Shown here: in pieces, positions 1 through 19,303 of the stretch | How the letters are laid out: each line of letters opens with the position of its first letter | Numbering within the stretch: position 1 is the stretch's first letter | Source of the DNA: Azolla caroliniana | Taxonomy: Eukaryota > Plantae > Polypodiophyta | DNA length: 22,191 bases | NCBI GenBank assembly: GCA_043228905.1 | Contig: JBHGNT010000507.1 | Span: 1-22,191 of the forward strand | Direction of reading: 5' to 3' | Position numbers and translations under genes: made by a program | Notes under the pieces: generated by a model | The model's database searches: none | Told to the model about the DNA's origin: nothing | Seen by the model: only the letters and a program-made list of their open reading frames with translations

Positions 1-119
1 AGGCACTGCGAGCACCTGCAGTCCAGAGGTAGGCATCATATTCCTTCTATTAGGTTTTGGTTTTTATTAGGTATCATATTCTTTCTATTAGGTTTAGGGT
101 TGCTTCTAATAGGTACCAT

Positions 120-900
120 AAATGTGTGTATGATTAAATACATGTATGTGTGTATGATTCAATACATTTGTGTGTGTATGTGTATGATTAAATACATGTA
201 TGTGTGTGTATGATTGAATACATTTCTGTGTGTGTATGATTGAATACATTTCTGTGTGTGTATGATTGAATACATTTCTGTGTGTGATGGGTTTAGGGTT
301 ACATGTATGTGTGTATTTAAGATCTTCTTTGGGCTGTGAATGTGTGTGTTTGTTGTATGATTGAATACATTTATTTGGGAATGTGCGTGTATACATGTGT
401 ATGATTGAATACATTTCTGTGTGTGTATGATTGAATACATGTATGTGTGTATGATTGAATACATTTGTGTGTGTGATGGTTGAATACATGTATGTGTGTA
501 TTTAAGATCTTCTTTGGGCTGTGAATGTGTGTGTTTGTTGTATGATTGAATACATTTATTTGGGAATGTGTGTGTATACATGTGTATGATTGAATACATT
601 TGTGTGTGTGATGGTTGAATACATGTATGTGTGTATTTAAGATCTTCTTTGGGCTGTGAATGTGTGTGTTTGTTGTATGATGAATACATTTATTTGGGAA
701 TGTGTGTGTATACATGTGTATGATTGAATACATGTATTTGTGTATTTTAGATCTTCCATGGGCTGCGAATGTGTGTGCATGTGTATGATTGAATACATGT
801 TTGTGTGTATTTAAGATCTTCTATAGGCTGTGATTTAATACATGTATGTGTGCATTTAAGATCTCCCATGGGCTGTGTATGATTGAATACATGTATGATT
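120..900. repeat. Tandem minisatellite with core (TG)nTATGATTGAATACAT and higher-order blocks containing TTTAAGATCTTCTTTGGGCTGTGAATG
   Basis: Many visible copies of GTATGATTGAATACAT; longer blocks recur near 315, 500, 635, 745, 810 and 855. This array explains the His/Thr-rich minus-strand ORFs at 106-733. Confidence 0.95.
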
Positions 901-907
901 TTGATTT

Positions 908-973
908 TGCCAACATTTGAATGTCATTTAAATGCCAACATTTGAATGTCATTTAAATGCCAACATTTGAATG
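908..973. repeat. 25-bp tandem repeat TGCCAACATTTGAATGTCATTTAAA, about 2.6 copies
   Basis: Seen directly; a further partial copy (ACATTTGAATGTCA) lies near 1024. Confidence 0.9.
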
Positions 974-1125
974 CTTGAATTTGCCCATGTGATTCATGCA
1001 GTATTGGGCTCTTTTTTATGCCCACATTTGAATGTCAAATCTAAAATTTTGTATACATTCTTTGCGTTTTTTCTCCCTAAATAATAGTAATGTAATGAAT
1101 GCCTTTCTAAAAATGTTTTGTACAG

Positions 1126-3143
1126 ATGGCTAGTCGGTCCAAGATCTTCATAGACTTTGATGCAGATTGGGGTGAAACAATACCCTATGAAGGGAGGTAT
1201 GGCATGAATCATTTCTCTACTTTATATTGTGTATAAATAATAATGTTTGTGTGCTAACTTGAATGTTGGTTTAGGGTTTATGTAAGAAAGGGTGTTAGGT
1301 GCCCCAAATCCAATGATACGGAGGCTGAAAACATCATTACTCAAGACTCGAGCATGGATACGAACCCCATGCATGACGTGGGTCCAGGTGTTGAAGATAT
1401 CAAAGTAAATGGTGAGTTTATGTCCATTCTTATAATCATTATTGATGTAAGCATATTTTGGGTTTTTCTAATGCAAATGTGACACCATTGTTGTAGTGGA
1501 CCCTATGTCCCTCTTCAAGTGTGGAAGAGACTCAACAGGTATCAAATGTCGCACCTGTATTGTGGGAGATTCGTGTAGAAAAGAGGGGAGATGGTTTCGA
1601 AAAAAAGCGGACATGGAGGCCCATTTACAGAAGGCACATGGCATCCATGTAATACTGCCTCGGGGGCTAAAGATAGACGAAGAAGAGCAATCGACCTCCA
1701 TGAGGAGTACAGCCACATCATTCTTCAGCGAATACGAAAGACAACGATCAATAAATCGTTTTTTGGATCCGGAGCTCAAGTATAATAGATCACGCCAATC
1801 ACACATGAGGAAGTTGAGGACAAGAGCAATAAAAATCTTCAAAGCCACTCCGGACTCACTTCGAACATGCAAGGAGGCTGATTTCATTGCTCAATTCGTT
1901 AGCCAACAAATGGCCAGGTATGACGAGGGAAAGGAGCATAGGATGGCAAAAGTGAGGTTGAAGATTGCGGATGCGTCTAAAGATTATGTAAGTATGGTTT
2001 ATGATTTTGTGTGCATCTTATGTGAGTTTAAAACTTATGATTATGTGTGAATCTTATGTATGAATTGTAGTGTAAGAGTCATGGAATTCCCATACCAAAG
2101 GATGAGGCACATGTCGAGATCGATGGTGGTCAAGACCAACTGTCAGAATCGACAATGCAACAAGCAAGGAGGCCGAAAATCCAAATCCGCAGGAAAGAAG
2201 TGGACCCATGTAATTTGGAGTTCATTACATCATCTGACACAGATGAGGATGCAGACATTGGGATTGTCTTTGTTGGTCCAGGGACAATCTCGAAAACATG
2301 GGATAACTCTGCAAGAAATAAGTTCACCAGGTATGTTGTTATGCTGGGGGCATGATATCAATAGTTAACATCATGTTTGTTTAGTAGTTACTAATCTAGC
2401 CTAATAAACAGGTATCAGGTGGCATGCCGACGACTGGATGTAGCAGTCTTCTTGTCGGAGATACAACTATGTTCGTTGATCACAGTAGGGGAGATGGCAT
2501 CCACATGGATGATAACCCTCTTCCATTTATGGATGGAGTACTCGCTGCCCCCCGAGATCAACAAGCGGTTTCATATTGTGGATCCGCTATGGGTACAACT
2601 AGAAGGCCAAGGCGATAAGGTCAAAGACGTACTCACTCGTGTTCCTGAAAGGGATTATGTCTTCATTCCAATATTGAACGCAGGGCATTGGGTGCTTTGG
2701 TTGAAGATGCGACAAACTCCTACGGGTCTCGATGCCAAGGTGAGGAGCCCAATTATATTTTGTGATCCACTAAATATTCATCCGACTACCAGGGTGCGGA
2801 CATTGGGTGATTTGGCTATACGACATATCTCGAGTCGGACACATGACCATTGCATCATCAACAACGGGCAATTCCATGAATTGCGTATCCCAACCCAACC
2901 TAATGGGACCGATTGTGGGTATTACGTGATGCAAACTATTCGCATGTTGGTCGAGGAGTTGATTCAAGGATTTGAGTCCGATCAATTTGTAAGTATTTAT
3001 GAGATTTGAATTTGAGCATTTGTTTTTGTTTTTGTTGATGGCATCTTCAATTGTAGGGTAAGGAGCAATGGTTTGGATTCGAAGACGTGGAGCTCCTTCG
3101 GAAAATCATGGCAAAATGGGCACGAAGGACTTTGGGCATATGA
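1126..3143 (+). CDS. C2H2 zinc finger plus ULP1/peptidase C48 (SUMO-protease-like) protein, 532 aa, 6 exons, transposon-borne
   Basis: Exons 1126-1196, 1299-1411, 1497-1987, 2071-2330, 2412-2988 and 3057-3143 all have GT-AG junctions with compatible phases (1599 nt, no internal stop). C48 motifs: YVFIPILNAGHWVL (His), IIFCDPL (Asp), PTQPNGTDCGYYVM (Gln, Cys) and C-terminal WFGFEDVELLRK. CRTC...F-x5-M-x2-H-x4-H finger in exon 3. The ATG directly follows a CAG acceptor, so an upstream exon is possible. Confidence 0.85.
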
Positions 3144-3154
3144 CTACGTGGAGT

Positions 3155-3577
3155 CATTTTGCAATGGTTGTATATGACTCAATGTAAATCATTTTGGTTG
3201 TATATGAATCTCATTTTGGTTGTAGATGACTCAATGTAAATTGCAATGGTTGTAGATGACTCAATGTAAATCATTTTGGTTGTATATGAATCTCATTTTG
3301 GTTGTAGATGACTCAATGTAAATCATTTTGGTTGTAGATGACTCAATGTAAATCATTTTGGTTGTATATGACTCAATGTAAATCATTTTGGTTGTATATG
3401 AATCTCATATTGGTTGAATATGAATCAATTTTTGAATCTCATTTTGGTTGTATATGAATCTCATCTTGGTTGAATATGAATCAATTTTTGAATGGCATTT
3501 TGGTTGTATATGAATCTCATTTTGGTTGTGTATGAATCTCATTTTGGTTGTATATGAAAATCATTTTGGTTGTATAT
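3155..3577. repeat. Tandem minisatellite with core CATTTTGGTTGTA(T/G)ATGA, immediately 3' of the ULP1 gene
   Basis: More than a dozen copies with two alternating spacers (CTCAATGTAAAT and ATCT), beginning about 12 bp after the TGA at 3143. Confidence 0.95.
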
Positions 3578-3659
3578 TGGAATTGTTTTGGGTGTCAAAA
3601 GAATAAAACTAATAGCTTATTGACAAGTAGTCACGGCAATGGTTTTTGAGAAAGGCCAA

Positions 3660-3852
3660 GAAAGAGTAAGTATATAGAAAGAGTGTTGTAATCAAAGAAT
3701 GTTGTTGTAGAAAGAGTAAGTATATAGAAAGAGTGCTTCGGTCCTTGTTGTAAACAATACGAAAGACATAACAAGACTCAATGTCAATCTTATTCAAAGA
3801 CATAACAAGACTCGATGTCAATCTTCTTCAAAGACATAACAAGACTCAATGT
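3660..3852. repeat. Short local tandem duplications: GAAAGAGTAAGTATATAGAAAGAGTG x2 and AAAGACATAACAAGACTC(A/G)ATG x3
   Basis: Copies seen near 3660 and 3710, and near 3762, 3796 and 3829. Confidence 0.85.
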
Positions 3853-3861
3853 GATTAGTGT

Positions 3862-4253
3862 GGAGCTCGACTCATTCATGTTCATTAAAAAAGGGAGCCC
3901 CACTCATTAAAAAGGGAGCCCGACTCTAGTAAAAAGGGAGCCCGACTGATCAATGTGGAGCCCGACTCATTCTTGTTCATTAAAAAAGGGAGCCCCACTC
4001 ATTAAAAAGGGAGCCCGACTCTGGTAAAAGGGAGCCCGACTGATTAATGTGGAGCCAGACTCATTCTTGTTCATTAAAAAAGGGAGCCCCACTCATTAAA
4101 AAGGGAGCCCGACTTTGGTAAAAAGGGAGCCCGACTCATTCATGTTCATTAAAAAAGGGAGCCCCATTCATTAAAAAGGGAGCCCGACTCTGGTAAAAAG
4201 GGAGCCCGACTGATAATGTGGAGCCCGACTCATTAAAAAAGGGAGCCCGACAC
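3862..4253 (+). repeat. Array of 17 GGAGCCCGACTC-type 12-mers with A-tract spacers (higher-order unit ~95 bp)
   Basis: Motif starts at 3862, 3894, 3915, 3937, 3957, 3989, 4010, 4031, 4051, 4083, 4104, 4126, 4158, 4179, 4201, 4220 and 4242. Confidence 0.95.
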
Positions 4254-4422
4254 AGTAATAGGGAAGTGCCCAACTACGTGTAATGATGGCGTCTCAACAG
4301 TCATATTAACGACTACAGTAAATTAATTCACCAAATTCAGTAGCATGCACTAAGAGTCTTCCCATCATTCCCAATTAACCCATTCCCTTCCTTAATAGTC
4401 TATTAATCACTCGCACTCATAT

Positions 4423-4708
4423 CATTCACTCTCATTCTCGATCGTTAATCTACTCCATTCATGTGAATTATTTGAATTCATTCACTTGAATTCATTTGAT
4501 TTCATTCACTTCATTCACCTCAATCATTGGCATTCTTGATCATATTGTATTTGATTTCATTTGATCATATTGTAGGCCATTTGATTTCATTCACTCTCAT
4601 TCTCGATCATTAATCTACTCCATTCATGTGAATTATTTGAATTCATTCACTTGAATTCATTTGATTTCATTCACCTCAATCATTGGCATTCTTGATCATA
4701 TTGTATTT
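4423..4708. repeat. Direct duplication of a ~120-130 bp CATT/TTCA-rich segment directly upstream of the transposase ATG
   Basis: CATTCACTCTCATTCTCGATC(G/A)TTAATCTACTCCATTCATGTGAATTATTTGAATTC...CTTGATCATATTGTATTTG occurs at ~4423-4553 and again at ~4588-4709. Confidence 0.9.
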
Positions 4709-4711
4709 GCT

Positions 4712-7621
4712 ATGGAGAGCACAATGCATCATGGTGTCTTCGCCATGTCAGAAGATGAATTGGAGGATACGTCATGGTCATCCAATGCATCCGAGGACGA
4801 ATTGGAGGATCCTTTTGAGTCATCAGATTCCGATCGTGAGGATGAGGCGGTCGATCCCTTCATGTATTGTTCCCCCAGGTATTTTGCATTTTCAAGAGGT
4901 ACGTATAATTTGATGATTAAAGATTTATTGGGACAAGTTAAGGTAACATTGGAAGCATTACGTGATGTCGCAAGGGGAGCACCTCTTTCACTTCATGCAT
5001 GGAGGCGCATGAAGAGTCGTCTCATTCTCAGGTTTGAGAGTGCAATTTACCTTAAAGCATCACCTAATCTTCAAGTCTTATACGTCGAGAAATGGAGGGA
5101 AGTAGTATTAGCGTCACATGGTGACACATCCCATCACACGTTTTCAAAGACTCTTAAAGAGTTAAAGCTAGTTTATGCGACTGATGTACGTGATTATGGC
5201 ATCCCACCGGAGTACGTGAAAGCACTCATTACAAGTTGTGGTTGCCAAACGGTATCGAAGGTCGACTCGATAGAAGGTTTGGGATCAAGCATGGCCAAAT
5301 ATAACAAGACCCTACCCATAGAAGTGATCAAGGTAGAAACCCACCAATTAGACGATGCGCTCACGGATTTGCAAACCAAGTACCACACACGTTTAAGGAA
5401 AGGAGTCAAGAAGGGTATGCGTGTGACTAGGTATAGTTGCCATCGTGCTGGGACATCTCGACTTGCGTCTAATTCCACTCGACGACACAGGTGCACACCC
5501 CGATGTGGGTGCACATTCCATGTGGATGTTAGAATCAATAATGATGTTGACATTGAGACACTTACCATTTCAATATATGGACCTCACAGTGGTCATGTAC
5601 CATGTAGTAGGTCGGATGTGTACCATTTGCCAGTACACCCCAATGTCATAAGTTGTTGCAAAGATGACCTATTTGATGTTGGGTGTGCAAGGCATGTGGC
5701 ACGAATGAGCATGCGTAAGGAAGCATATCATAAGTCCAAGGCTAGTCCATTAGAGCTTGTTACCTATCGGTTCTTTATGATACCAAAGGAGGTCCATAAC
5801 ATGGCAAATAGGTTAAAAATCGGGAGTGTCATGACTAAGGTTGATTGGGCTTTGATGATGCAAGATGCCTATGCACTCCGAGATCTTGGGAAAGTGGCTC
5901 ATGTTCAACCCTACTTGACTGGTGAACCAGGATCTCCCCCCATACAACCATTTATCTTGATACTTCAAGATCAATGGATGTTGGAAATGTGTGAGCGGTT
6001 GACCCTAAACAACTCTTGGGCAATCGACTCGACATTTAAAACAAACCAATTCGGGCTACCATTATATGCAGCAGTTGCCCCCAACGCCATGGGAATTGGG
6101 ATCCCATTATGGTACATGCTTTGTAGTTCTGATAAGGGATCAAACCATGAGCAAGTGGCATTAGAAACTTGTTTGAGAGTCATATTCGCAAGGATGCCCA
6201 TGGTGAGGCCAAATGCGATAGTGATCGATAAATGTTGGACATCATATAATGCCATAACTAATGTGGTTGCAACAGACCGTCAATCTTGGATTGTTGTAAA
6301 TGGGCAACGGTCCCAAACACATTGTCGACTTTTGTTGTGTCAGTTTCACGCCAAAAAGTCATGGGTGGACAACTTGTTGCCAAAAGTAAGTGCAAATGAG
6401 AGAATCCATCTTTATCAACGAATGTGCCAACTGATGCAATGCATTACTGAATCATCATTCAATGCAATGTGTGAGGAGTTAAAGTTAGAATATGTGGACA
6501 AGCCCGGTGTTTGGCAATATATAGAAGGAGGATGGTGTGGCTTGACATGTGTGTGGAGGAAACTCTGGCCCAAGTTTGGTAGAATGTTCAACTATGGACA
6601 CGTTGACACTACCAATATTGTGGAAAGACATTGGCAGTTTATCAAGTATACTACCTTGAGGGGAAGAATAAACCGATCAATTACCGACCTTCTGCATGTC
6701 TTAATCGGGGATAGTGAAACTGGCACTTGCATAGGAGGAACGGTAATAGAGTGGTACAAGCAACGACAAGAAATATGTGAGAGTGGTCGGTTTGCACCCC
6801 GTGCGAATTGTAGGGATCAAAGGTCCCGACTTAAAGAAGCGGAGAGAATATTGGAAAGGTATGTCGACAATACTTCCACAATTGAAATTGTCGACGAGGC
6901 CCGATATTGGTTTAGAATCTTGAGCATGACGACTCCCACTCTATGGTATAATGTCTCACTCCAATGCTCATATTGTGATTGCCAAGACATTGTGAGTAAA
7001 TGTAAGCATTTACTAGGTATCCGAATGATTATTGAGAGGCATATGCCACATTTATGTGGCTCATTGCCTTTTATAGATCACGCGACCCAAATGCGAATGG
7101 ACCATAATACAGAAATAGAAGTGGAGGCAGAGGTAGAGCAAGTAGAGGAGACAAACCCCACAATATCCGAGATTGAATCATTCAAGTCCAAAATACAAAC
7201 GGTCATGAAAGCACTTCAATGTCTCGAGCAAGGGTTAGGAACCTTCGATCGTGCAACTATTGTCGAAGGTATACAAACATTGGAAGATGTGGCTGAGAAG
7301 GTGTATCGCGTTGGTGCACCAAAATCAACCAATAAAGAAGATGGTAGATCAATAAGTCGCAACCAACAAATCGGTGCCAAAAGAAGTGCAACAATAGACA
7401 TCTCGCAAGAACTTATTGGCAGCTCCCCAAACACTTCCAAATCCCACTCCGGAAAACTACAAAGAGGTGCTAGTCGGGCTAGGAGGAGATTGCCATTGGT
7501 TGACCATGAGAAGGTTCGGTGTTTGCGTTGTGATGGCTTGACCTTGACTTCAAGGGACTCAAATGTTACATGCTGTAAAAATTGTGGTTGCATCTTGCAA
7601 TCATCCCGACATGAGCCATAA
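4712..7621 (+). CDS. MULE/MuDRA-type DDE transposase with SWIM zinc finger, 969 aa, intronless
   Basis: First in-frame ATG of the 986-aa ORF is at 4712. Motifs (numbered on the 986-aa ORF): AIDSTFKTNQFGLPL (D456), IVIDK (D523), LLCQFH (CxxH), TTNIVERHW (E655), SWIM CDC-x6-CKH (772-783), WRKY/GCM1/FAR1-like RYSCHRAG...RCGC...HSGH (257-312), C-terminal CLRC...CKNC. Confidence 0.93.
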   Translation: MESTMHHGVFAMSEDELEDTSWSSNASEDELEDPFESSDSDREDEAVDPFMYCSPRYFAFSRGTYNLMIKDLLGQVKVTLEALRDVARGAPLSLHAWRRMKSRLILRFESAIYLKASPNLQVLYVEKWREVVLASHGDTSHHTFSKTLKELKLVYATDVRDYGIPPEYVKALITSCGCQTVSKVDSIEGLGSSMAKYNKTLPIEVIKVETHQLDDALTDLQTKYHTRLRKGVKKGMRVTRYSCHRAGTSRLASNSTRRHRCTPRCGCTFHVDVRINNDVDIETLTISIYGPHSGHVPCSRSDVYHLPVHPNVISCCKDDLFDVGCARHVARMSMRKEAYHKSKASPLELVTYRFFMIPKEVHNMANRLKIGSVMTKVDWALMMQDAYALRDLGKVAHVQPYLTGEPGSPPIQPFILILQDQWMLEMCERLTLNNSWAIDSTFKTNQFGLPLYAAVAPNAMGIGIPLWYMLCSSDKGSNHEQVALETCLRVIFARMPMVRPNAIVIDKCWTSYNAITNVVATDRQSWIVVNGQRSQTHCRLLLCQFHAKKSWVDNLLPKVSANERIHLYQRMCQLMQCITESSFNAMCEELKLEYVDKPGVWQYIEGGWCGLTCVWRKLWPKFGRMFNYGHVDTTNIVERHWQFIKYTTLRGRINRSITDLLHVLIGDSETGTCIGGTVIEWYKQRQEICESGRFAPRANCRDQRSRLKEAERILERYVDNTSTIEIVDEARYWFRILSMTTPTLWYNVSLQCSYCDCQDIVSKCKHLLGIRMIIERHMPHLCGSLPFIDHATQMRMDHNTEIEVEAEVEQVEETNPTISEIESFKSKIQTVMKALQCLEQGLGTFDRATIVEGIQTLEDVAEKVYRVGAPKSTNKEDGRSISRNQQIGAKRSATIDISQELIGSSPNTSKSHSGKLQRGASRARRRLPLVDHEKVRCLRCDGLTLTSRDSNVTCCKNCGCILQSSRHEP

Positions 7622-7806
7622 TCTTAATATGTAACGTGTATATTCATATTTCATTTTAGGGTTGTCAACATTTGACATTTTAATATTTTATGTAAGACTT
7701 GTTATTTGAATCTTTAGGTTTTGTTGAGAAATTTTATGATCAGTTTCATGGCAAATATTTGTTGTACACTTACAATTTTGTGGAGTTTTTGATGTTTGTT
7801 GCTACA

Positions 7807-7983
7807 GAGTCGGGCTCCTTTTGACAGAGTCGGGCTCCTTCTTACTGATGTGATCTGACAGCGGGGCTCCTTCTGACAGAGTCGGGCTCCCTCTTGCATA
7901 GGCTGTCTGACAGCGGGGCTCCTTTTTGACAGAGTCGGGCTCCCTGTGGCAGAGTCGGGCTCCTTTTCGCAGAGTCGGGCTCC
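7807..7983 (-). repeat. Subterminal array of 8 GAGTCGGGCTCC-type 12-mers (reverse complement of the 3862-4253 motif)
   Basis: Copies start at 7807, 7827, 7859, 7879, 7911, 7932, 7952 and 7972. Confidence 0.95.
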
Positions 7984-8121
7984 TTCTGACAGACGTTGTC
8001 AGCTTTTTATCCATCTTGGACGGTGGAGATCGAACGCGCCATCAGCGATGTGACCTGCACCGTCCCTCTCCGCGATTCCCTCACTTGCCCTCTTTAATAT
8101 TTGGTAGCAGTTAGTCACGAG

Positions 8122-8228
8122 CATACATCACACATCACACATCATACATCATAACATCATACATCATAACATCATACATATATACATACACACATGCATG
8201 CATGCATGCATGCATGTATGTATGTATG
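8122..8228. repeat. Compound simple repeat (CATCA/CATA)n-(ATGC)n-(TATG)n upstream of the host gene
   Basis: Seen directly between the element end and the ATG at 8276. Confidence 0.85.
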
Positions 8229-8275
8229 ACATGTGTTGTGTCAAGTCAAAGGCTCTGATCCACAGAGCCAGAGAC

Positions 8276-11200
8276 ATGGCTTCCGCCATGGCACCTTCAT
8301 CCCTCTTCTCTTCTTCTTCTTCTGCCCTTTCGTTCCACCCTTACCTGCGTGTCTTTGGTTGCAGAAATACCCTCAGGATCGGCATTAGCAGACCAACCAT
8401 CTTTGTTGTAAATGCATTAGCCAAGCAACAACCATCTCGACAAAATACTGCGAAGCCGTCTTCTTCTTCGAAAAGACCTGCAGATCTCCAGAGAGGAGGA
8501 GGAGGAGGAGGAGGAAAAGGAGGAGGAGGAGATGATGATCGATATCGAAACAGGAATAGTAGCAATAAGAACGTTAGCAGTAGAAACCAGAATAGTCGTA
8601 GTAGTGGTAATAGTGATAGAGGTACTGCTGGCTATGGGTATGGCGGTGGTGGGAACGTAAAAAGAGAACAGAGCTTGAAACGAGAACAGTTATACAGAGG
8701 TGGAAGCAAAACCAGTAGAAATTATGTTGAAGAAGTAGTAGACGAAGAAGAAGAAGAAGAAGATGATGATGATGAAGATGACGATGATGACTACGACGAT
8801 GATATTGATGAAGATGACGATGATGAGGCATATGAGTTTGATCCTGAGTCTTTGCTTCTTCCTCGGCCACCTGCAGGATTCATCCTTGATAGAGATGGCA
8901 CCACTGTCTCTCTCATGGCTCCTCCGAATAAACGAATCACTACCATTGTAGGCTCTTTTCCAATATTTGCCTTCTCCATTACTGGTTATTCTGGTTCTGG
9001 TTGTTTTTTAACGTTATAAAATACAACGTTTGCTCGGCATTAGAGTTTTTACTTTTAATAGAATATTGTGTTTCATTATATTCGGGTTCACTGTGTTTAT
9101 GCTGTATTAGGTTTTTTACAGTGGCAAAGTCCAATTTTTGTATTACGGCATTTAGTGCTACGAAATGCTATGGTCGATCTGCTAGGGTTTTCACTGCCAC
9201 AAAAATGCCATATTAGTCCGATTAGGGTCTATTGCTAAGAAAAGTCTAGTGTTCAAATCTCTGTAAAGGTTTTAATGAAGTTTTTTTTACAGCTGTAAAA
9301 TACCATGTCTATTCTATGTAAGGATGGACTGTTACAAAATACCATTCAAAGACTTTGTTATGGTTCTGGATTAGGTTTTTACTGCTAACAAGCTTCCAGT
9401 GTTCAACTCTATGCAAAGGTTTGGATTGGGTTTTTACTGCTACAAAATTCCATTTTTATTCGAACCAAGGTTTAACTGTTAAATAATACCATGTTTATTA
9501 GATGTGGCTTACCTTCACAAATTACCTTCTTGGTCCTGTACTAAGATTTTTCAGTCACAAAATATCTTTGCAAAAGTGTCTGGATTAGGGTTTGTTGCTG
9601 CAAACGTTCTCATTATGGTTTTTATCACTACGAAAACTGCAGATTTCATTAGAGATTCTGGCCAGGATTTTTACTTTTTACAATCCATTCCTTTTTATTT
9701 ATCGCAGGTTGATCCTGCAACCAAATTGCCTCTGGATTGCCTCATAAGACGAGTTTTCTCGAGCATCGATGCCAGACAGTGCTTTCTTCTCTGCCCTCTT
9801 GACACGTGAGTCTATCTTAAATCCATTATTTTATACTATTGTGGAATTATTCCTGCCATATGTCATCTGGCGCTAAATGACTAAGATAATTCTCTGATGT
9901 TAATAACGATATGGATTATCTCAGTCCAGTGCAAATACTAAGAATCAATGGAGAAGATAAAGTTCTGAAGGAGGTTTGTATCATTCCCATCAGATGGTCA
10001 ACTCAATTGATTTATAATAAAAAATTAGTCTGAATGATTTCTCATCTAATGGATATTATTTCGTGATCCTTGTGGATATTACAGATTACAGATGAGGAGT
10101 TGGAGGACATTTTTCCTACTGCATCATACGAACTAGCAAAGAGGCGCCTGCATCTAACCTTTAGCGGGTAATTATGCTGATATCTTTCAAAGCATGATTT
10201 TGCATTATCAACTTTAAACTCTTATATTTGCTTACTAAAACAGTGTTTAAGGTAAGGCCATTCTTCCAATTACCAATAATGTGTTCACAATTACAAATCA
10301 ACAGGTGTTTGTTGTTTGTGTATCTTTCTAAGTGCTCAACTATGTATATGATCTACTATCCCCTGGGGAAATTGAACTTTATCCAAAAGCCTCAATCTTC
10401 TGAATGTGGTTGACATCCTCTCAATGTTGTTGCAATGAACCATGGGATTACAGACTTTCTCATTCAAACATGAATTTTCATAAATATTCAACATATAAGA
10501 GAGAAGTCATAACAAATAAACTTACGCAAATATATAGCATTACGAATATCACAAAAATATCTTTTATCCTTGTACGCTTCCTAGAAGAACTGTACTGGAT
10601 TGAAGAAAAGGTTTAGTCTAAGTCTTAATATATCGAGTCTTTTAGAGGAGAAACTGTGGTATTTAAATATATGAACATTCCTTGATCATCTAGAATTCCA
10701 AGTTTTGAAGGCTTTCAAATGTTTTCTAAAATAACTATGTAGTATGGGCCGCATGATGATTATGTAGACTATGCTTTGGTTTCCATTTCTTTCTTTGCTA
10801 TGTTTCCAAATGTTCAGGTCTTGAGGGCAAACTAGATATGTTTTGGGGTTGGGACATCTTCAATATACTATCAATTATTTTCTAAAATAAAATCTTTCTG
10901 CATAATAGATATCCAAAATGTTATAGAAGAGTTGTTTTTATTGAAATTGGACACAAGGAATGAGGGTTGCTAACTTGTTGCAATGACATGCAGCTATTGC
11001 TTGACTTTGCGAGGTGGCTTTTGTTACTCAGAGAACGATCTAATGGATGTTAATACAGGTTTTGCTACGCATGATGTCTCTTTACGTGAATTTCTTTGCA
11101 CAATTTTTATGCCAATATTTGTACATGTGAAATTTGAATCAACACTATGATGATTGTGTTTCAGTATATGGTGGAAGTGGTGACCACTCTTTACATGAAG

Positions 11201-13685: not shown

Positions 13686-19284
<5,599 letters not shown>

Positions 19285-19303
19285 TATCACTAAATTCGAA
19301 GAC

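What the first reader, a model, noticed from the sequence alone, without database searches (positions are those of the whole stretch)
1..8092. Apparently intact two-gene Mutator element with a possible counter-silencing module: ZnF-SUMO protease, transposase and private repeat arrays
Seen: both genes are uninterrupted and keep their catalytic residues, and every non-coding interval is filled with an element-specific tandem array (120-900, 3155-3577, 3862-4253, 7807-7983). Established: ULP1-like passengers occur in plant MULEs (Arabidopsis Kaonashi, VANDAL vanB), VANDAL VANC proteins bind short motifs arrayed in their own element's non-coding DNA to counter silencing, and SUMO pathways contribute to transposon silencing. 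Inference: this may be a young autonomous family in which a DNA-binding deSUMOylase is recruited to the element's own arrays.
Basis: partly seen in the sequence, partly recalled or inferred. Interest (0 to 1): 0.8.

Follow-up and report, generated by a model that had tools for sequence, protein, structure and literature searches.

The report
Two-gene fern-type Mutator transposon, motif arrays
The window holds most of an intact, recently active Mutator-like transposon that carries a SUMO-protease-like gene next to its transposase. A short DNA motif private to each subfamily is stacked in arrays in front of the transposase gene and at the element's end, so a known angiosperm theme now turns up in a different form in a fern-like genome.

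Summary
Window 1-8125 is the right-hand ~8.1 kb of a TIR-bearing Mutator-like element whose left end lies off the window.

- **Genes.** A six-exon gene (540 codons) encodes a Zn-module/helical/C48 (Ulp1) protease with the catalytic H, D, Q and C. A single-exon 969-aa transposase keeps D439, D506, E638, CxxH and SWIM. Both evolve under purifying selection (omega about 0.3 and 0.25).
- **Relatives.** Contigs from plant-associated assemblies include two complete elements with 152-155 bp TIRs enclosing the same two genes. At least five different insertion sites are 98-99.8% identical, so the family moved recently.
Arrays 3862-4253 and 7807-7983 carry the same motif, GGAGCCCGAC, in opposite orientation. 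Complete relatives have a third array at the left end. The motif differs between subfamilies while the TIRs stay conserved.
- **Untested.** Whether the protease binds these arrays and counters silencing. The transposase has its own fast-evolving WRKY-like DNA-binding domain, and one subfamily copy (L003) has arrays but no protease gene.
- **Context.** Ulp1-carrying MULEs and VANC motif arrays are known in angiosperms. Here the TIRs, the N-terminal domain and the fern-like host are different.

Verdict: a new variant of a known kind, of moderate interest.

The parts
1..28 (+). Probable end of a non-coding first exon (5' UTR) of the protease gene. The left TIR, left subterminal array and promoter lie off the window.
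   Evidence: GT donor after position 28. Complete relatives L002 and L005 have TIR, array, a short exon and a long intron ending just before the ATG. There is no RNA evidence.
29..1125 (+). Probable 5'-UTR intron holding tandem arrays at 122-897 (unit about 26 bp, with 135/185-bp higher-order units) and 908-974 (25 bp x 2.6).
   Evidence: TRF. An AG acceptor lies directly before the ATG at 1126. The same arrangement is seen in L002 and L005.
1126..3143 (+). Protease gene, coding exons 1126-1196, 1275-1411, 1497-1987, 2071-2330, 2412-2988 and 3057-3143 (540 codons plus stop). Exon 3 encodes a C-x5-C-x15-H-x4-H Zn module, an acidic linker and a helical bundle. Exon 5 encodes the C48/Ulp1 catalytic domain.
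   Evidence: Splice sites and phases. Exon-by-exon conservation in L002, L004 and L011. Pfam C48. Alignment to 1EUV. dN/dS 0.32. Zn ligands nearly invariant in 17 relatives. AF2 model with pLDDT 81.
3159..3577 (+). Tandem array downstream of the protease gene (22/30/56/82/112-bp periods, unit like TCATTTTGGTTGTATATGAATC).
   Evidence: TRF. Shared with L001 and L013. No counterpart was found by TRF in L002 or L005.
3762..3852 (+). 34-bp x 2.7 tandem repeat.
   Evidence: TRF. Also present in L001.
3852..4258 (+). Internal motif array in front of the transposase gene. It holds 17 copies (up to 2 mismatches) of GGAGCCCGAC, all on the + strand, spaced 19-22 or 32 bp apart.
   Evidence: Arrays of a different motif sit at the same position in L002 (3713-4193) and L005 (4358-4534).
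4452..4683 (+). 24/56-bp tandem array just upstream of the transposase start codon.
   Evidence: TRF. L011 has a 21-bp array of a different sequence at the matching position, 4858-5178.
4712..7621 (+). Transposase gene, a single ORF of 969 aa. It has a variable N-terminus, a WRKY/FAR1-like Zn domain (about residues 240-296), a DDE core (D439, D506, E638, C543xxH546), a SWIM finger (C755, C757, C764, H766) and a variable C-terminus with a CxxC...CxxC ribbon.
7804..7993 (-). Right subterminal motif array. It holds 8 copies (up to 2 mismatches) of GGAGCCCGAC on the - strand, spaced 20-21 or 32 bp apart.
8004..8125 (-). Right terminal inverted repeat (about 122 bp) with an internal 10-bp inverted pair (8019-8028 and 8055-8064). 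The terminus reads ...ACGAGCATA.
   Evidence: Homology with L001, L002, L039 and the left ends of L002-L005 and L011 ends here.
8126..8233 (.). Flanking CATA/CATG-type microsatellite. It is not part of the element but recurs at family insertion sites.
   Evidence: TRF. Similar flanks occur in L001, L039, L006, L007, L008 and L011, and at the left flank of L004.

Best explanation
**What it is (shown).** Window 1-8125 is the right-hand ~8.1 kb of an autonomous, TIR-bearing Mutator-like element. The family was seen only in fern proteomes (Adiantum) and in related plant DNA from environmental assemblies. The element encodes two proteins. One is a DDE transposase with a WRKY/FAR1-like N-terminal Zn domain and a SWIM finger. 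The other is an accessory protein made of a small C2H2-like Zn module, a helical bundle and a catalytically complete C48/Ulp1 protease domain.

**Ends and arrays (shown).** The ~120-155 bp TIRs are conserved across subfamilies. Inside the TIRs, a GC-rich 11-13-mer is stacked in arrays at three places: left subterminal (+), directly upstream of the transposase gene (+) and right subterminal (-). The motif differs by subfamily: GGGAGCCCGAC here, GGTCGCCCAAC, CCTAACCCGGG and AGTAGCCCGGC in relatives. The three arrays share only the core motif. Spacer sequences differ.

**Mechanism (inferred).** The TIRs are probably the common transposase substrate. The arrays are probably binding platforms for an element-encoded, fast-evolving DNA-binding module. 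They would give each subfamily private recognition of its own ends and of the promoters of its genes.

**Which protein binds (not decided by the data).**
- Transposase N-terminal domain: about 0.45.
- Zn module of the protease, acting like En/Spm TnpA or VANDAL VANC: about 0.3.
- Both, or a host factor: the remainder.

**Role of the protease.** Selection keeps it as an active cysteine protease. The likeliest role, by family membership only, is removal of SUMO from the transposase or from host chromatin or silencing factors.
For: - **Gene integrity and catalytic residues:**
- **Purifying selection:** transposase omega is 0.19-0.25 in six pairs. Protease omega is 0.27-0.36 in three pairs, and both other copies keep open frames.
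- **Complete relatives:** both genes lie inside TIRs in L002 (111-265 / 7858-8012, 93.5% identical) and L005 (668-819 / 8202-8353, 91%).
- **Recent mobility:** L004-L010 encode an identical 975-aa transposase. They are 97.8-99.8% identical in DNA yet have at least five different flanks.
- **Three-array layout with subfamily-specific motifs:**
- **Internal array is not a copy of the left end:** only the short core motif is shared.
- **No TIR next to the internal array:** so the transposase module is not a nested element.
- **TIRs conserved while arrays differ:**
- **Both candidate DNA-binding regions diverge fastest.** The transposase N-terminal and WRKY-like regions are 46-59% identical between subfamilies against 86-90% for the core. 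The protease exon 3 is 45-48% identical.
- **Zn ligands:** C20, C26, H42 and H47 are invariant or nearly so in 17 relatives down to about 20% identity. More distant members carry an AT-hook-like GRP motif right after them.
- **Spacing:** site spacings in both window arrays fall only at 19-22 or 32 bp, about 2 and 3 helical turns.
Against: - No binding, expression, methylation or protease assay exists for any member. Every functional step is inference.
- The window lacks the left end, so this copy's completeness, TIR identity and age cannot be measured.
- No clean 9-11 bp target-site duplication could be read at L002 or L005.
- The helical phasing seen in the window does not hold in L002 or L005, where periods are 18, 28, 31 and 40 bp.
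- The Zn module has no Pfam zinc-finger hit and no significant Foldseek match in PDB (best E = 0.36).
- The related contigs are short metagenome assemblies. They may collapse or mix copies; L013 looks mosaic.
Confidence: 0.6

Rival explanations
1. The Zn-module/Ulp1 protein itself binds the element's private arrays and removes SUMO from silencing factors there. That would keep the element unmethylated and expressed, a fern-lineage analogue of VANC/KIU anti-silencing.
For: - The accessory gene is linked to the transposase, intact and under selection. Its Zn-module exon is the most constrained (omega 0.18) within the subfamily, yet only 45-48% identical between subfamilies with different motifs.
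- The Zn ligands are conserved family-wide, and distant members add an AT-hook-like GRP motif.
- In complete relatives arrays sit upstream of both genes, and there are arrays in an intron, as for VANC21 targets (PMC5735166).
- The TIRs are conserved while the arrays turn over.
- In En/Spm, the accessory protein TnpA, not the catalytic transposase, binds the subterminal motif arrays and can reactivate silenced elements (own knowledge).
- L002 and L011 differ at two putative recognition-helix positions of the finger, and their predominant motif differs by one base. This is a lead, not a test.
Against: - L003 carries TIR, its own motif array and an intact transposase but no protease gene.
- The transposase has an equally fast-evolving DNA-binding domain.
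- There is no VANC/DUF1985 or PMD domain, no Pfam zinc-finger hit and no structural match to a DNA-binding fold.
- There are no methylation, small-RNA or binding data.
- CpG observed/expected (0.62 in the element, 0.40 in the flank) is uninformative.
Confidence: 0.22
2. The arrays are by-products of replication slippage in non-coding DNA and have no sequence-specific function. The Ulp1 gene is a captured passenger that hitch-hikes with the transposase.
For: - Several arrays (122-897, 3159-3577, 4452-4683) have no conserved counterpart in sequence in other subfamilies, and some are absent there.
- TE non-coding DNA is prone to tandem duplication.
- Captured Ulp1 fragments are common in plant MULEs (PMC13317346, PMC2528002).
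Against: - The GC-rich motif is kept at three separate places with different spacers. It shows strict strand polarity (+, +, -) in three subfamilies, and it changes at all three places together.
- The protease gene keeps all its exons, splice sites and catalytic residues, and omega is about 0.3 across copies and subfamilies.
- The same domain architecture exists in Adiantum.
Confidence: 0.1
3. The two genes are domesticated host genes (FAR1/MUSTANG-like plus a host ULP), not a mobile element.
For: Both are intact and under purifying selection.
Against: - TIRs enclose both genes in L002 and L005.
- Many near-identical copies sit in different flanks.
- Dozens of full-length and fragmentary copies exist per subfamily.
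Confidence: 0.02

Closest known systems
Kaonashi (KI/KIU) MULEs and Ulp1-carrying VANDALs of Arabidopsis and other eudicots; Ulp1-containing MULEs of melon, rice and grapevine (Hoen 2006 and van Leeuwen 2007 as cited in PMC13317346; PMC2528002)
   Same: A Mutator-superfamily element carrying a C48/Ulp1 protease domain on an accessory gene beside the transposase gene. The family is multi-copy, and the Ulp1 part is conserved rather than decaying.
   Different: - The angiosperm elements are described as non-TIR MULEs with three genes, and the Ulp1 domain sits on a VANC-type gene (PMC13317346). Here there are long TIRs, two genes, no DUF1985/VANC domain and a different N-terminal Zn/helical domain found only in fern-type sequences.
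- The review dates the angiosperm capture to the monocot-eudicot split.
- Whether the fern Ulp1 comes from a shared or an independent capture was not tested.
VANDAL21/VANDAL6 VANC anti-silencing system (PMC5735166, PMC10398659)
   Same: Short motifs (8-9 bp there, 11-13 bp here) are stacked in same-orientation tandem arrays in non-coding parts: upstream of the transposase gene and in introns of accessory genes. The motifs differ between related subfamilies and evolve by tandem-repeat turnover.
   Different: - VANC is reported as dicot-specific and related to MAIN/PMD proteins (PMC13547354). No such protein is encoded here.
- Hypomethylation activity is demonstrated for VANC and untested here.
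- Here the motif also forms inverted subterminal arrays next to conserved TIRs.
MuDR of maize (mudrA transposase plus mudrB accessory gene, ~200 bp TIRs)
   Same: A two-gene autonomous Mutator element with long TIRs. The accessory protein is needed alongside the transposase. MURA-MURB interaction maps to the variable N-terminus of the transposase (PMC12973397).
   Different: - In MuDR the two genes are convergent and transcribed from the TIRs (own knowledge). Here they are tandem, each with its own upstream region.
- MURB has no protease domain.
- MURA binds a site within the TIR rather than subterminal motif arrays (own knowledge).
En/Spm (CACTA) subterminal 12-bp TnpA-binding motifs (own knowledge)
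   Same: Many copies of a short motif lie in subterminal arrays of both ends, overlapping the promoter. An element-encoded non-catalytic protein binds them, brings the ends together and can reverse epigenetic silencing.
   Different: It belongs to a different superfamily (no MULE domain, short 13-bp TIRs, 3-bp TSD), and its accessory protein has no protease domain.

Membership tests
Mutator / MULE superfamily | MULE-type DDE transposase (Pfam PF10551) with D, D, E and the C/DxxH motif | tested here: met
   PF10551 scores E = 2e-9, 38.2 bits against a cut-off of 27.6. D439, D506, E638, C543 and H546 are invariant in nine relatives.
Mutator / MULE superfamily | Long terminal inverted repeats (about 100 bp or more) | tested here: met
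   TIRs of 155 bp in L002 and 152 bp in L005 enclose both genes. The window shows only the right TIR, 8004-8125, which aligns to them.
Mutator / MULE superfamily | 9-11 bp target-site duplication | tested here: inconclusive
   The flanks of L002 and L005 show no clean duplication. Both left ends abut another element's right end, and most flanks are CATA-type microsatellite. The window lacks its left end.
Mutator / MULE superfamily | N-terminal WRKY-GCM1/FAR1-type Zn DNA-binding domain and C-terminal SWIM finger | tested here: inconclusive
   The Pfam FAR1 hit is only a weak trace (E = 0.043, below cut-off), and no SWIM model is reported. However, C243, C267, H292 and H295, and the CxCx6CxH residues C755/C757/C764/H766, are invariant.
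C48 / Ulp1-SENP cysteine proteases | C48 fold with the catalytic His, Asp and Cys and the oxyanion Gln | tested here: met
   PF02902 scores 36.7 bits against a cut-off of 20.7. H (GHW), D (CDPL), Q (TQPNG) and C (DCG) align with the matching residues of yeast Ulp1, 1EUV. They are conserved in L002, L004 and L011.
C48 / Ulp1-SENP cysteine proteases | Cleaves SUMO rather than another ubiquitin-like protein | not testable with these tools
   This needs an enzyme assay. Some C48 members act on other modifiers.
VANDAL / KI-MULE (VANA-VANB-VANC) elements | VANC-type protein (DUF1985, PMD/MAIN-like fold) | tested here: not met
   No such Pfam hit on any protease exon or ORF at E <= 0.1. The profile search of the N-domain found only fern-type relatives. 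Foldseek against PDB gave no significant match.
VANDAL / KI-MULE (VANA-VANB-VANC) elements | Lack of TIRs (non-TIR MULE) | tested here: not met
   This family has conserved 120-155 bp TIRs.
VANDAL / KI-MULE (VANA-VANB-VANC) elements | Subfamily-specific short motifs arrayed in one orientation in non-coding DNA | tested here: met
VANDAL / KI-MULE (VANA-VANB-VANC) elements | The accessory protein binds the motifs and causes loss of DNA methylation | not testable with these tools
   This needs ChIP/DAP-seq and methylomes.
C2H2 zinc finger | Match to a curated C2H2 model, or a beta-beta-alpha fold with Cys2His2 ligands | tested here: inconclusive
   - No Pfam zinc-finger hit.
- The pattern C-x5-C-x15-H-x4-H is nearly invariant in 17 relatives.
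- The AF2 model shows a beta-hairpin, a short helix and a helix carrying both His (pLDDT about 80).
- The best Foldseek hit is a 43-residue archaeal ribosomal protein at E = 0.36.

The most novel reading that the evidence does not exclude
Ferns harbour an anti-silencing system that evolved independently of VANC. In it, a C2H2-like Zn module tethers a Ulp1 deSUMOylase to phased arrays of a subfamily-private motif at the element's promoters and ends. The protease would locally strip SUMO from host silencing machinery, and motif plus finger would co-evolve so that each subfamily protects only itself.
Probability: 0.15. Interest if true: 0.85.

Novelty: new variant of a known kind. Interest (0 to 1): 0.55.

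Why it matters
Ulp1 domains recur on accessory genes of active plant DNA transposons (PMC12973397, PMC13317346), but nobody knows what the protease does there. The only characterised sequence-specific anti-silencing system, VANC, is regarded as dicot-specific (PMC13547354).

This family offers a clean, apparently active test case outside seed plants, with several useful properties:
- two intact genes;
- conserved TIRs;
- a short, easily synthesised motif that differs between otherwise similar subfamilies;
- natural variants with and without the protease gene.

That makes two questions directly testable by swapping motifs and domains between subfamilies: which protein reads the arrays, and what the protease is for. 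If the protease proves to be array-tethered, SUMO removal would be a second, convergent route to transposon self-protection.

Tried and rejected
- **Nested-element idea.** I asked whether the transposase module between the two inverted arrays is a separate element. Rejected: there is no TIR-like sequence near 3600-3860 in the window or next to the internal arrays of L002 and L005.
- **Internal array as a duplicated left end.** Rejected: only the core motif is shared.
- **Target-site duplication.** I read the flanks of L002 and L005 and found no clean 9-11 bp repeat.
- **Left end of the window's subfamily.**
  - Contigs of this subfamily break at the arrays (L001 starts in array 3353-3577; L013 and L014 cover only the protease gene).
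BLAST of the window against them matched only L039, a right end attached to an unrelated interior.
- **Linkage in named ferns.** Adiantum loci came back without DNA.
  - One A. nelumboides transposase has a C48 gene 1.5 kb downstream on the opposite strand.
  - Another A. nelumboides transposase locus lists no neighbouring gene.
  - Two A. capillus-veneris protease loci show no annotated transposase nearby.
  - This is inconclusive, because TE genes are often left unannotated.
- **N-terminal domain of the protease.** The word search, the full profile search and Foldseek against PDB gave no relative outside this fern-type family and no significant fold match.
- **CpG decay as a proxy for methylation history.** Uninformative. 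The G-to-A motif variant of L011 is strand-asymmetric (13 A-type against 2 T-type), so it is not simple deamination.
- **Literature gap.** Sasaki et al. 2022 (EMBO J), the key paper on Ulp1-VANC diversification, is not held. I used a 2026 review's account of it.
- **Spliced model.** All searches, folds and dN/dS counts were done exon by exon, by reference, and split codons were dropped.
- **Human sequence.** None of the contigs looked human.

Full report
**1. What is in the window**

The sequence is eukaryotic and plant-like.
- It has GT-AG introns of 67-85 bp.
- Rab2-type GTPase exons lie on the minus strand at about 15.9-19.3 kb.
- The only named relatives of the element's proteins are from the ferns Adiantum nelumboides and A. 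capillus-veneris.

The organism itself was not determined. Nothing suggested human DNA.

**2. The observation**

Tandem Repeats Finder confirms arrays at 122-897, 3159-3577, 3852-4258 and 7804-7993. It adds smaller arrays at 908-974, 3762-3852 and 4452-4683.

*Transposase.* It is one open frame, 4712-7621, of 969 aa.
- It has a Pfam MULE hit above threshold.
- D439, D506, E638, the C543xxH546 motif and a CxCx6CxH SWIM finger are invariant in nine relatives down to 37% identity.
- Conserved Cys and His residues mark a WRKY/FAR1-like N-terminal domain.

*Protease gene.* It has six coding exons: 1126-1196, 1275-1411, 1497-1987, 2071-2330, 2412-2988 and 3057-3143.
- All splice sites are GT-AG. The phases fit, giving 540 codons plus stop.
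- Every exon is conserved in frame in three other subfamily representatives.
- Exon 5 is a C48 domain at 36.7 bits against a cut-off of 20.7.
- Its His, Asp, Gln and Cys align with the catalytic residues of yeast Ulp1.

All searches and counts were made exon by exon.

**3. Boundaries**

- Homology with other copies ends at about 8125 (...ACGAGCATA), not 8092.
- The last ~122 bp (8004-8125) is the right TIR. It aligns with the left and right ends of relatives.
- The window starts inside the element.
- By comparison with the complete relatives L002 and L005, position 1 lies in a short non-coding first exon. The 122-897 array lies in a 5'-UTR intron that ends at the ATG. This rests on splice-site consensus only.
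- The left TIR and whatever lies next to it are missing from the window.

**4. Relatives**

The word search found four close subfamilies (98, 74, 73 and 69% transposase identity) and more distant ones (46-47%), all in ENA plant-associated assemblies. It also found Adiantum proteins at 32-49% local identity.

Each 90% cluster holds 3-42 distinct sequences, both full-length and fragmentary.

*Complete elements.*
- L002 has TIRs at 111-265 and 7858-8012 (93.5% identical).
- L005 has TIRs at 668-819 and 8202-8353 (91%).
- Both enclose the protease gene followed by the transposase gene.

*Recent mobility.* L004-L010 encode the same 975-aa transposase and are 97.8-99.8% identical in DNA. They have at least five different flanks, so that subfamily moved recently.

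*The window's own subfamily.* It is represented by:
- L001 (95.8% DNA identity, different right flank);
- L013 and L014 (protease gene only);
- L039 and L002:1-107 (right ends only).

**5. Selection**

| Gene or region | Comparison | dS | omega |
|---|---|---|---|
| Transposase | six pairs | 0.04 to about 1.1 | 0.19-0.25 |
| Protease, whole | window vs L014 | 0.21 | 0.32 |
| Protease, Zn-module exon | window vs L014 | | 0.18 |
| Protease, C48 exon | window vs L014 | | 0.31 |

L013 and L014 have no stops or frameshifts in the exons they cover. The refutation criterion 'evolves neutrally' is therefore not met.

**6. The arrays: the main new point**

*Same motif, opposite orientation.* The arrays at 3852-4258 and 7804-7993 are the same motif, GGAGCCCGAC (with flanks: GGGAGCCCGACTC).
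- There are 16 copies on the + strand and 6 on the - strand at up to one mismatch, against 0.22 expected in the window.
- Among the first 14 related loci, only L001, from the same subfamily, has this motif.

*Three-array layout.* In the complete relatives the analogous motif sits in three arrays: left subterminal (+), directly upstream of the transposase gene (+) and right subterminal (-).

*Motif by subfamily.*

| Locus | Motif |
|---|---|
| window, L001 | GGGAGCCCGAC |
| L002 | GGTCGCCCAAC |
| L011 | mostly GGTCACCCAAC, in all three arrays |
| L004, L005 | CCTAACCCGGG |
| L003 | AGTAGCCCGGC |

An RCCC core is common to all of them.

*Evidence that the motif itself matters.*
- The arrays within one element share only the core, not the spacers.
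- No TIR accompanies the internal array.
- The TIRs are conserved across all subfamilies.
- In the window all 23 spacings between neighbouring sites are 19-22 or 32 bp, about two and three helical turns.
- That phasing is not seen in L002 or L005.

I read this as selection on the motif, as a binding site for a rapidly evolving element-encoded DNA-binding module.

**7. Which protein reads the arrays?**

Both candidates diverge fastest exactly where they might contact DNA.
- The transposase N-terminal and WRKY-like regions are 46-59% identical between subfamilies, against 86-90% for the catalytic core.
- Protease exon 3 is 45-48% identical between subfamilies.

*The protease's N-domain.*
- It has a C-x5-C-x15-H-x4-H pattern that is invariant or nearly so in 17 relatives.
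- In distant, Adiantum-type members an AT-hook-like GRP motif follows it. That motif is absent in the window's subfamily.
- AlphaFold (pLDDT 81) gives a beta-hairpin/helix module, an acidic disordered linker and a confident helical bundle.
- Foldseek finds nothing significant in PDB.
- Pfam finds neither a zinc finger nor a VANC/DUF1985 domain.
- A profile search of 1.8 billion representatives found the domain in only 87 clusters. The members that carry names are Adiantum proteins, and P0168 has the same N-domain plus C48 architecture.

*Against the protease as sole reader.* L003 has TIR, its own array and an intact transposase but no protease gene. The direct arrays flanking the protease gene would make such a deletion easy.

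I cannot decide between the two proteins. I put the transposase domain slightly ahead.

**8. Comparison with what is known**

- Ulp1 domains on MULE accessory genes are known in Arabidopsis (Kaonashi/KIU), melon, rice and grapevine (PMC13317346, PMC2528002).
- Peptidase_C48 is a recurrent accessory domain in active plant TIR transposons (PMC12973397).
- VANC proteins of VANDALs bind short motifs arrayed in non-coding DNA, and those motifs turn over by tandem-repeat evolution (PMC5735166).
- VANC is regarded as dicot-specific and MAIN-related (PMC13547354).

The present family shares the theme, but four things differ:
- it has long conserved TIRs;
- it has two genes rather than three;
- its N-terminal domain is different;
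- its host appears to be a fern.

The inverted subterminal arrays recall En/Spm TnpA sites (own knowledge). It is a MULE by the tests I could run. It is not a VANDAL/KI-MULE, because two of that group's defining features were tested and not met.

**9. Verdict**

- Supported: a linked, selected, recently active two-gene MULE with private arrays.
- Open: a DNA-tethered deSUMOylase that counters silencing. I rate it at about 0.15-0.25.

Novelty: a new variant of a known kind.

Noticed in passing
window 8126-8233; L001 ~4260-4330; L039 3190-3252; L006 ~6953-6992; L007 ~7205-7244; L008 ~7058-7097; L011 8857-8936; L004 1434-1494: Almost every right terminus of this family, and the left flank of L004, abuts a CATA/GTAT-type microsatellite. 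Either the element prefers such repeats as a target, or its terminal ...GCATACAT seeds them. This may also hide the target-site duplication.
   Followed up: partly
L002 1-107 and L005 ~620-662: In both complete relatives the left terminus is directly preceded by the right end of another family member, in tail-to-head order. The one in L002 is 91.6% identical to the window's right TIR.
   Followed up: partly
L003 2427-6278 (and L003 20-1513): This is a one-gene version of the element: left TIR, its own motif array (AGTAGCCCGGC) and an intact 955-aa transposase, with no protease gene. Its left terminus resembles the right-end type (GCTCGTGAC). Upstream lies an inverted fragment of a different MULE transposase (36% identity).
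   Followed up: partly
L039 1-3252: Two motif copies, a right TIR and a CATA microsatellite are attached to an AT-rich interior unrelated to the transposase. This is a candidate non-autonomous relative or a truncated copy.
   Followed up: partly
L013 vs window 1699-3852: L013 is identical to the window in the introns and in exons 3 (part), 4 (one change) and 6, but has 19 substitutions within exon 5. It is either a recombinant or gene-converted copy, or a chimeric metagenome assembly.
   Followed up: no
window 8198-9019 (+): An ORF starts about 150 bp beyond the element's right end. It has a Ser/Ala-rich N-terminus and Gly-rich and Asp/Glu-rich low-complexity stretches. The element therefore sits just upstream of a probable host gene. 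L001 and L009 also have host-like genes a few hundred bp beyond their right ends.
   Followed up: no
window ~15937-19290 (-): Exons of a Rab2-type small GTPase, for example 18736-18927 and 15937-16116, lie in AT-rich introns. An (AG)22 microsatellite sits at 19177-19221.
   Followed up: no
L002 742-1000; L011 1811-2321; window ~92-102 and ~288-300: Plant telomere-type repeats (TTTAGGG, telobox-like AAACCCTA) recur in the putative 5'-UTR intron of the protease gene in the L002/L011 subfamily. The window has only two TTTAGGGTT traces.
   Followed up: partly
protein alignment A4 (relatives P0153-P0195): In the distant, Adiantum-type members the Zn module is followed at once by a basic GRP (AT-hook-like) motif. 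The window's subfamily has PRGLKI there instead.
   Followed up: no
window 8019-8028 and 8055-8064: The TIR holds an internal 10-bp inverted pair (GACGGTGGAG ... CTGCACCGTC) that is conserved in all subfamilies.
   Followed up: no
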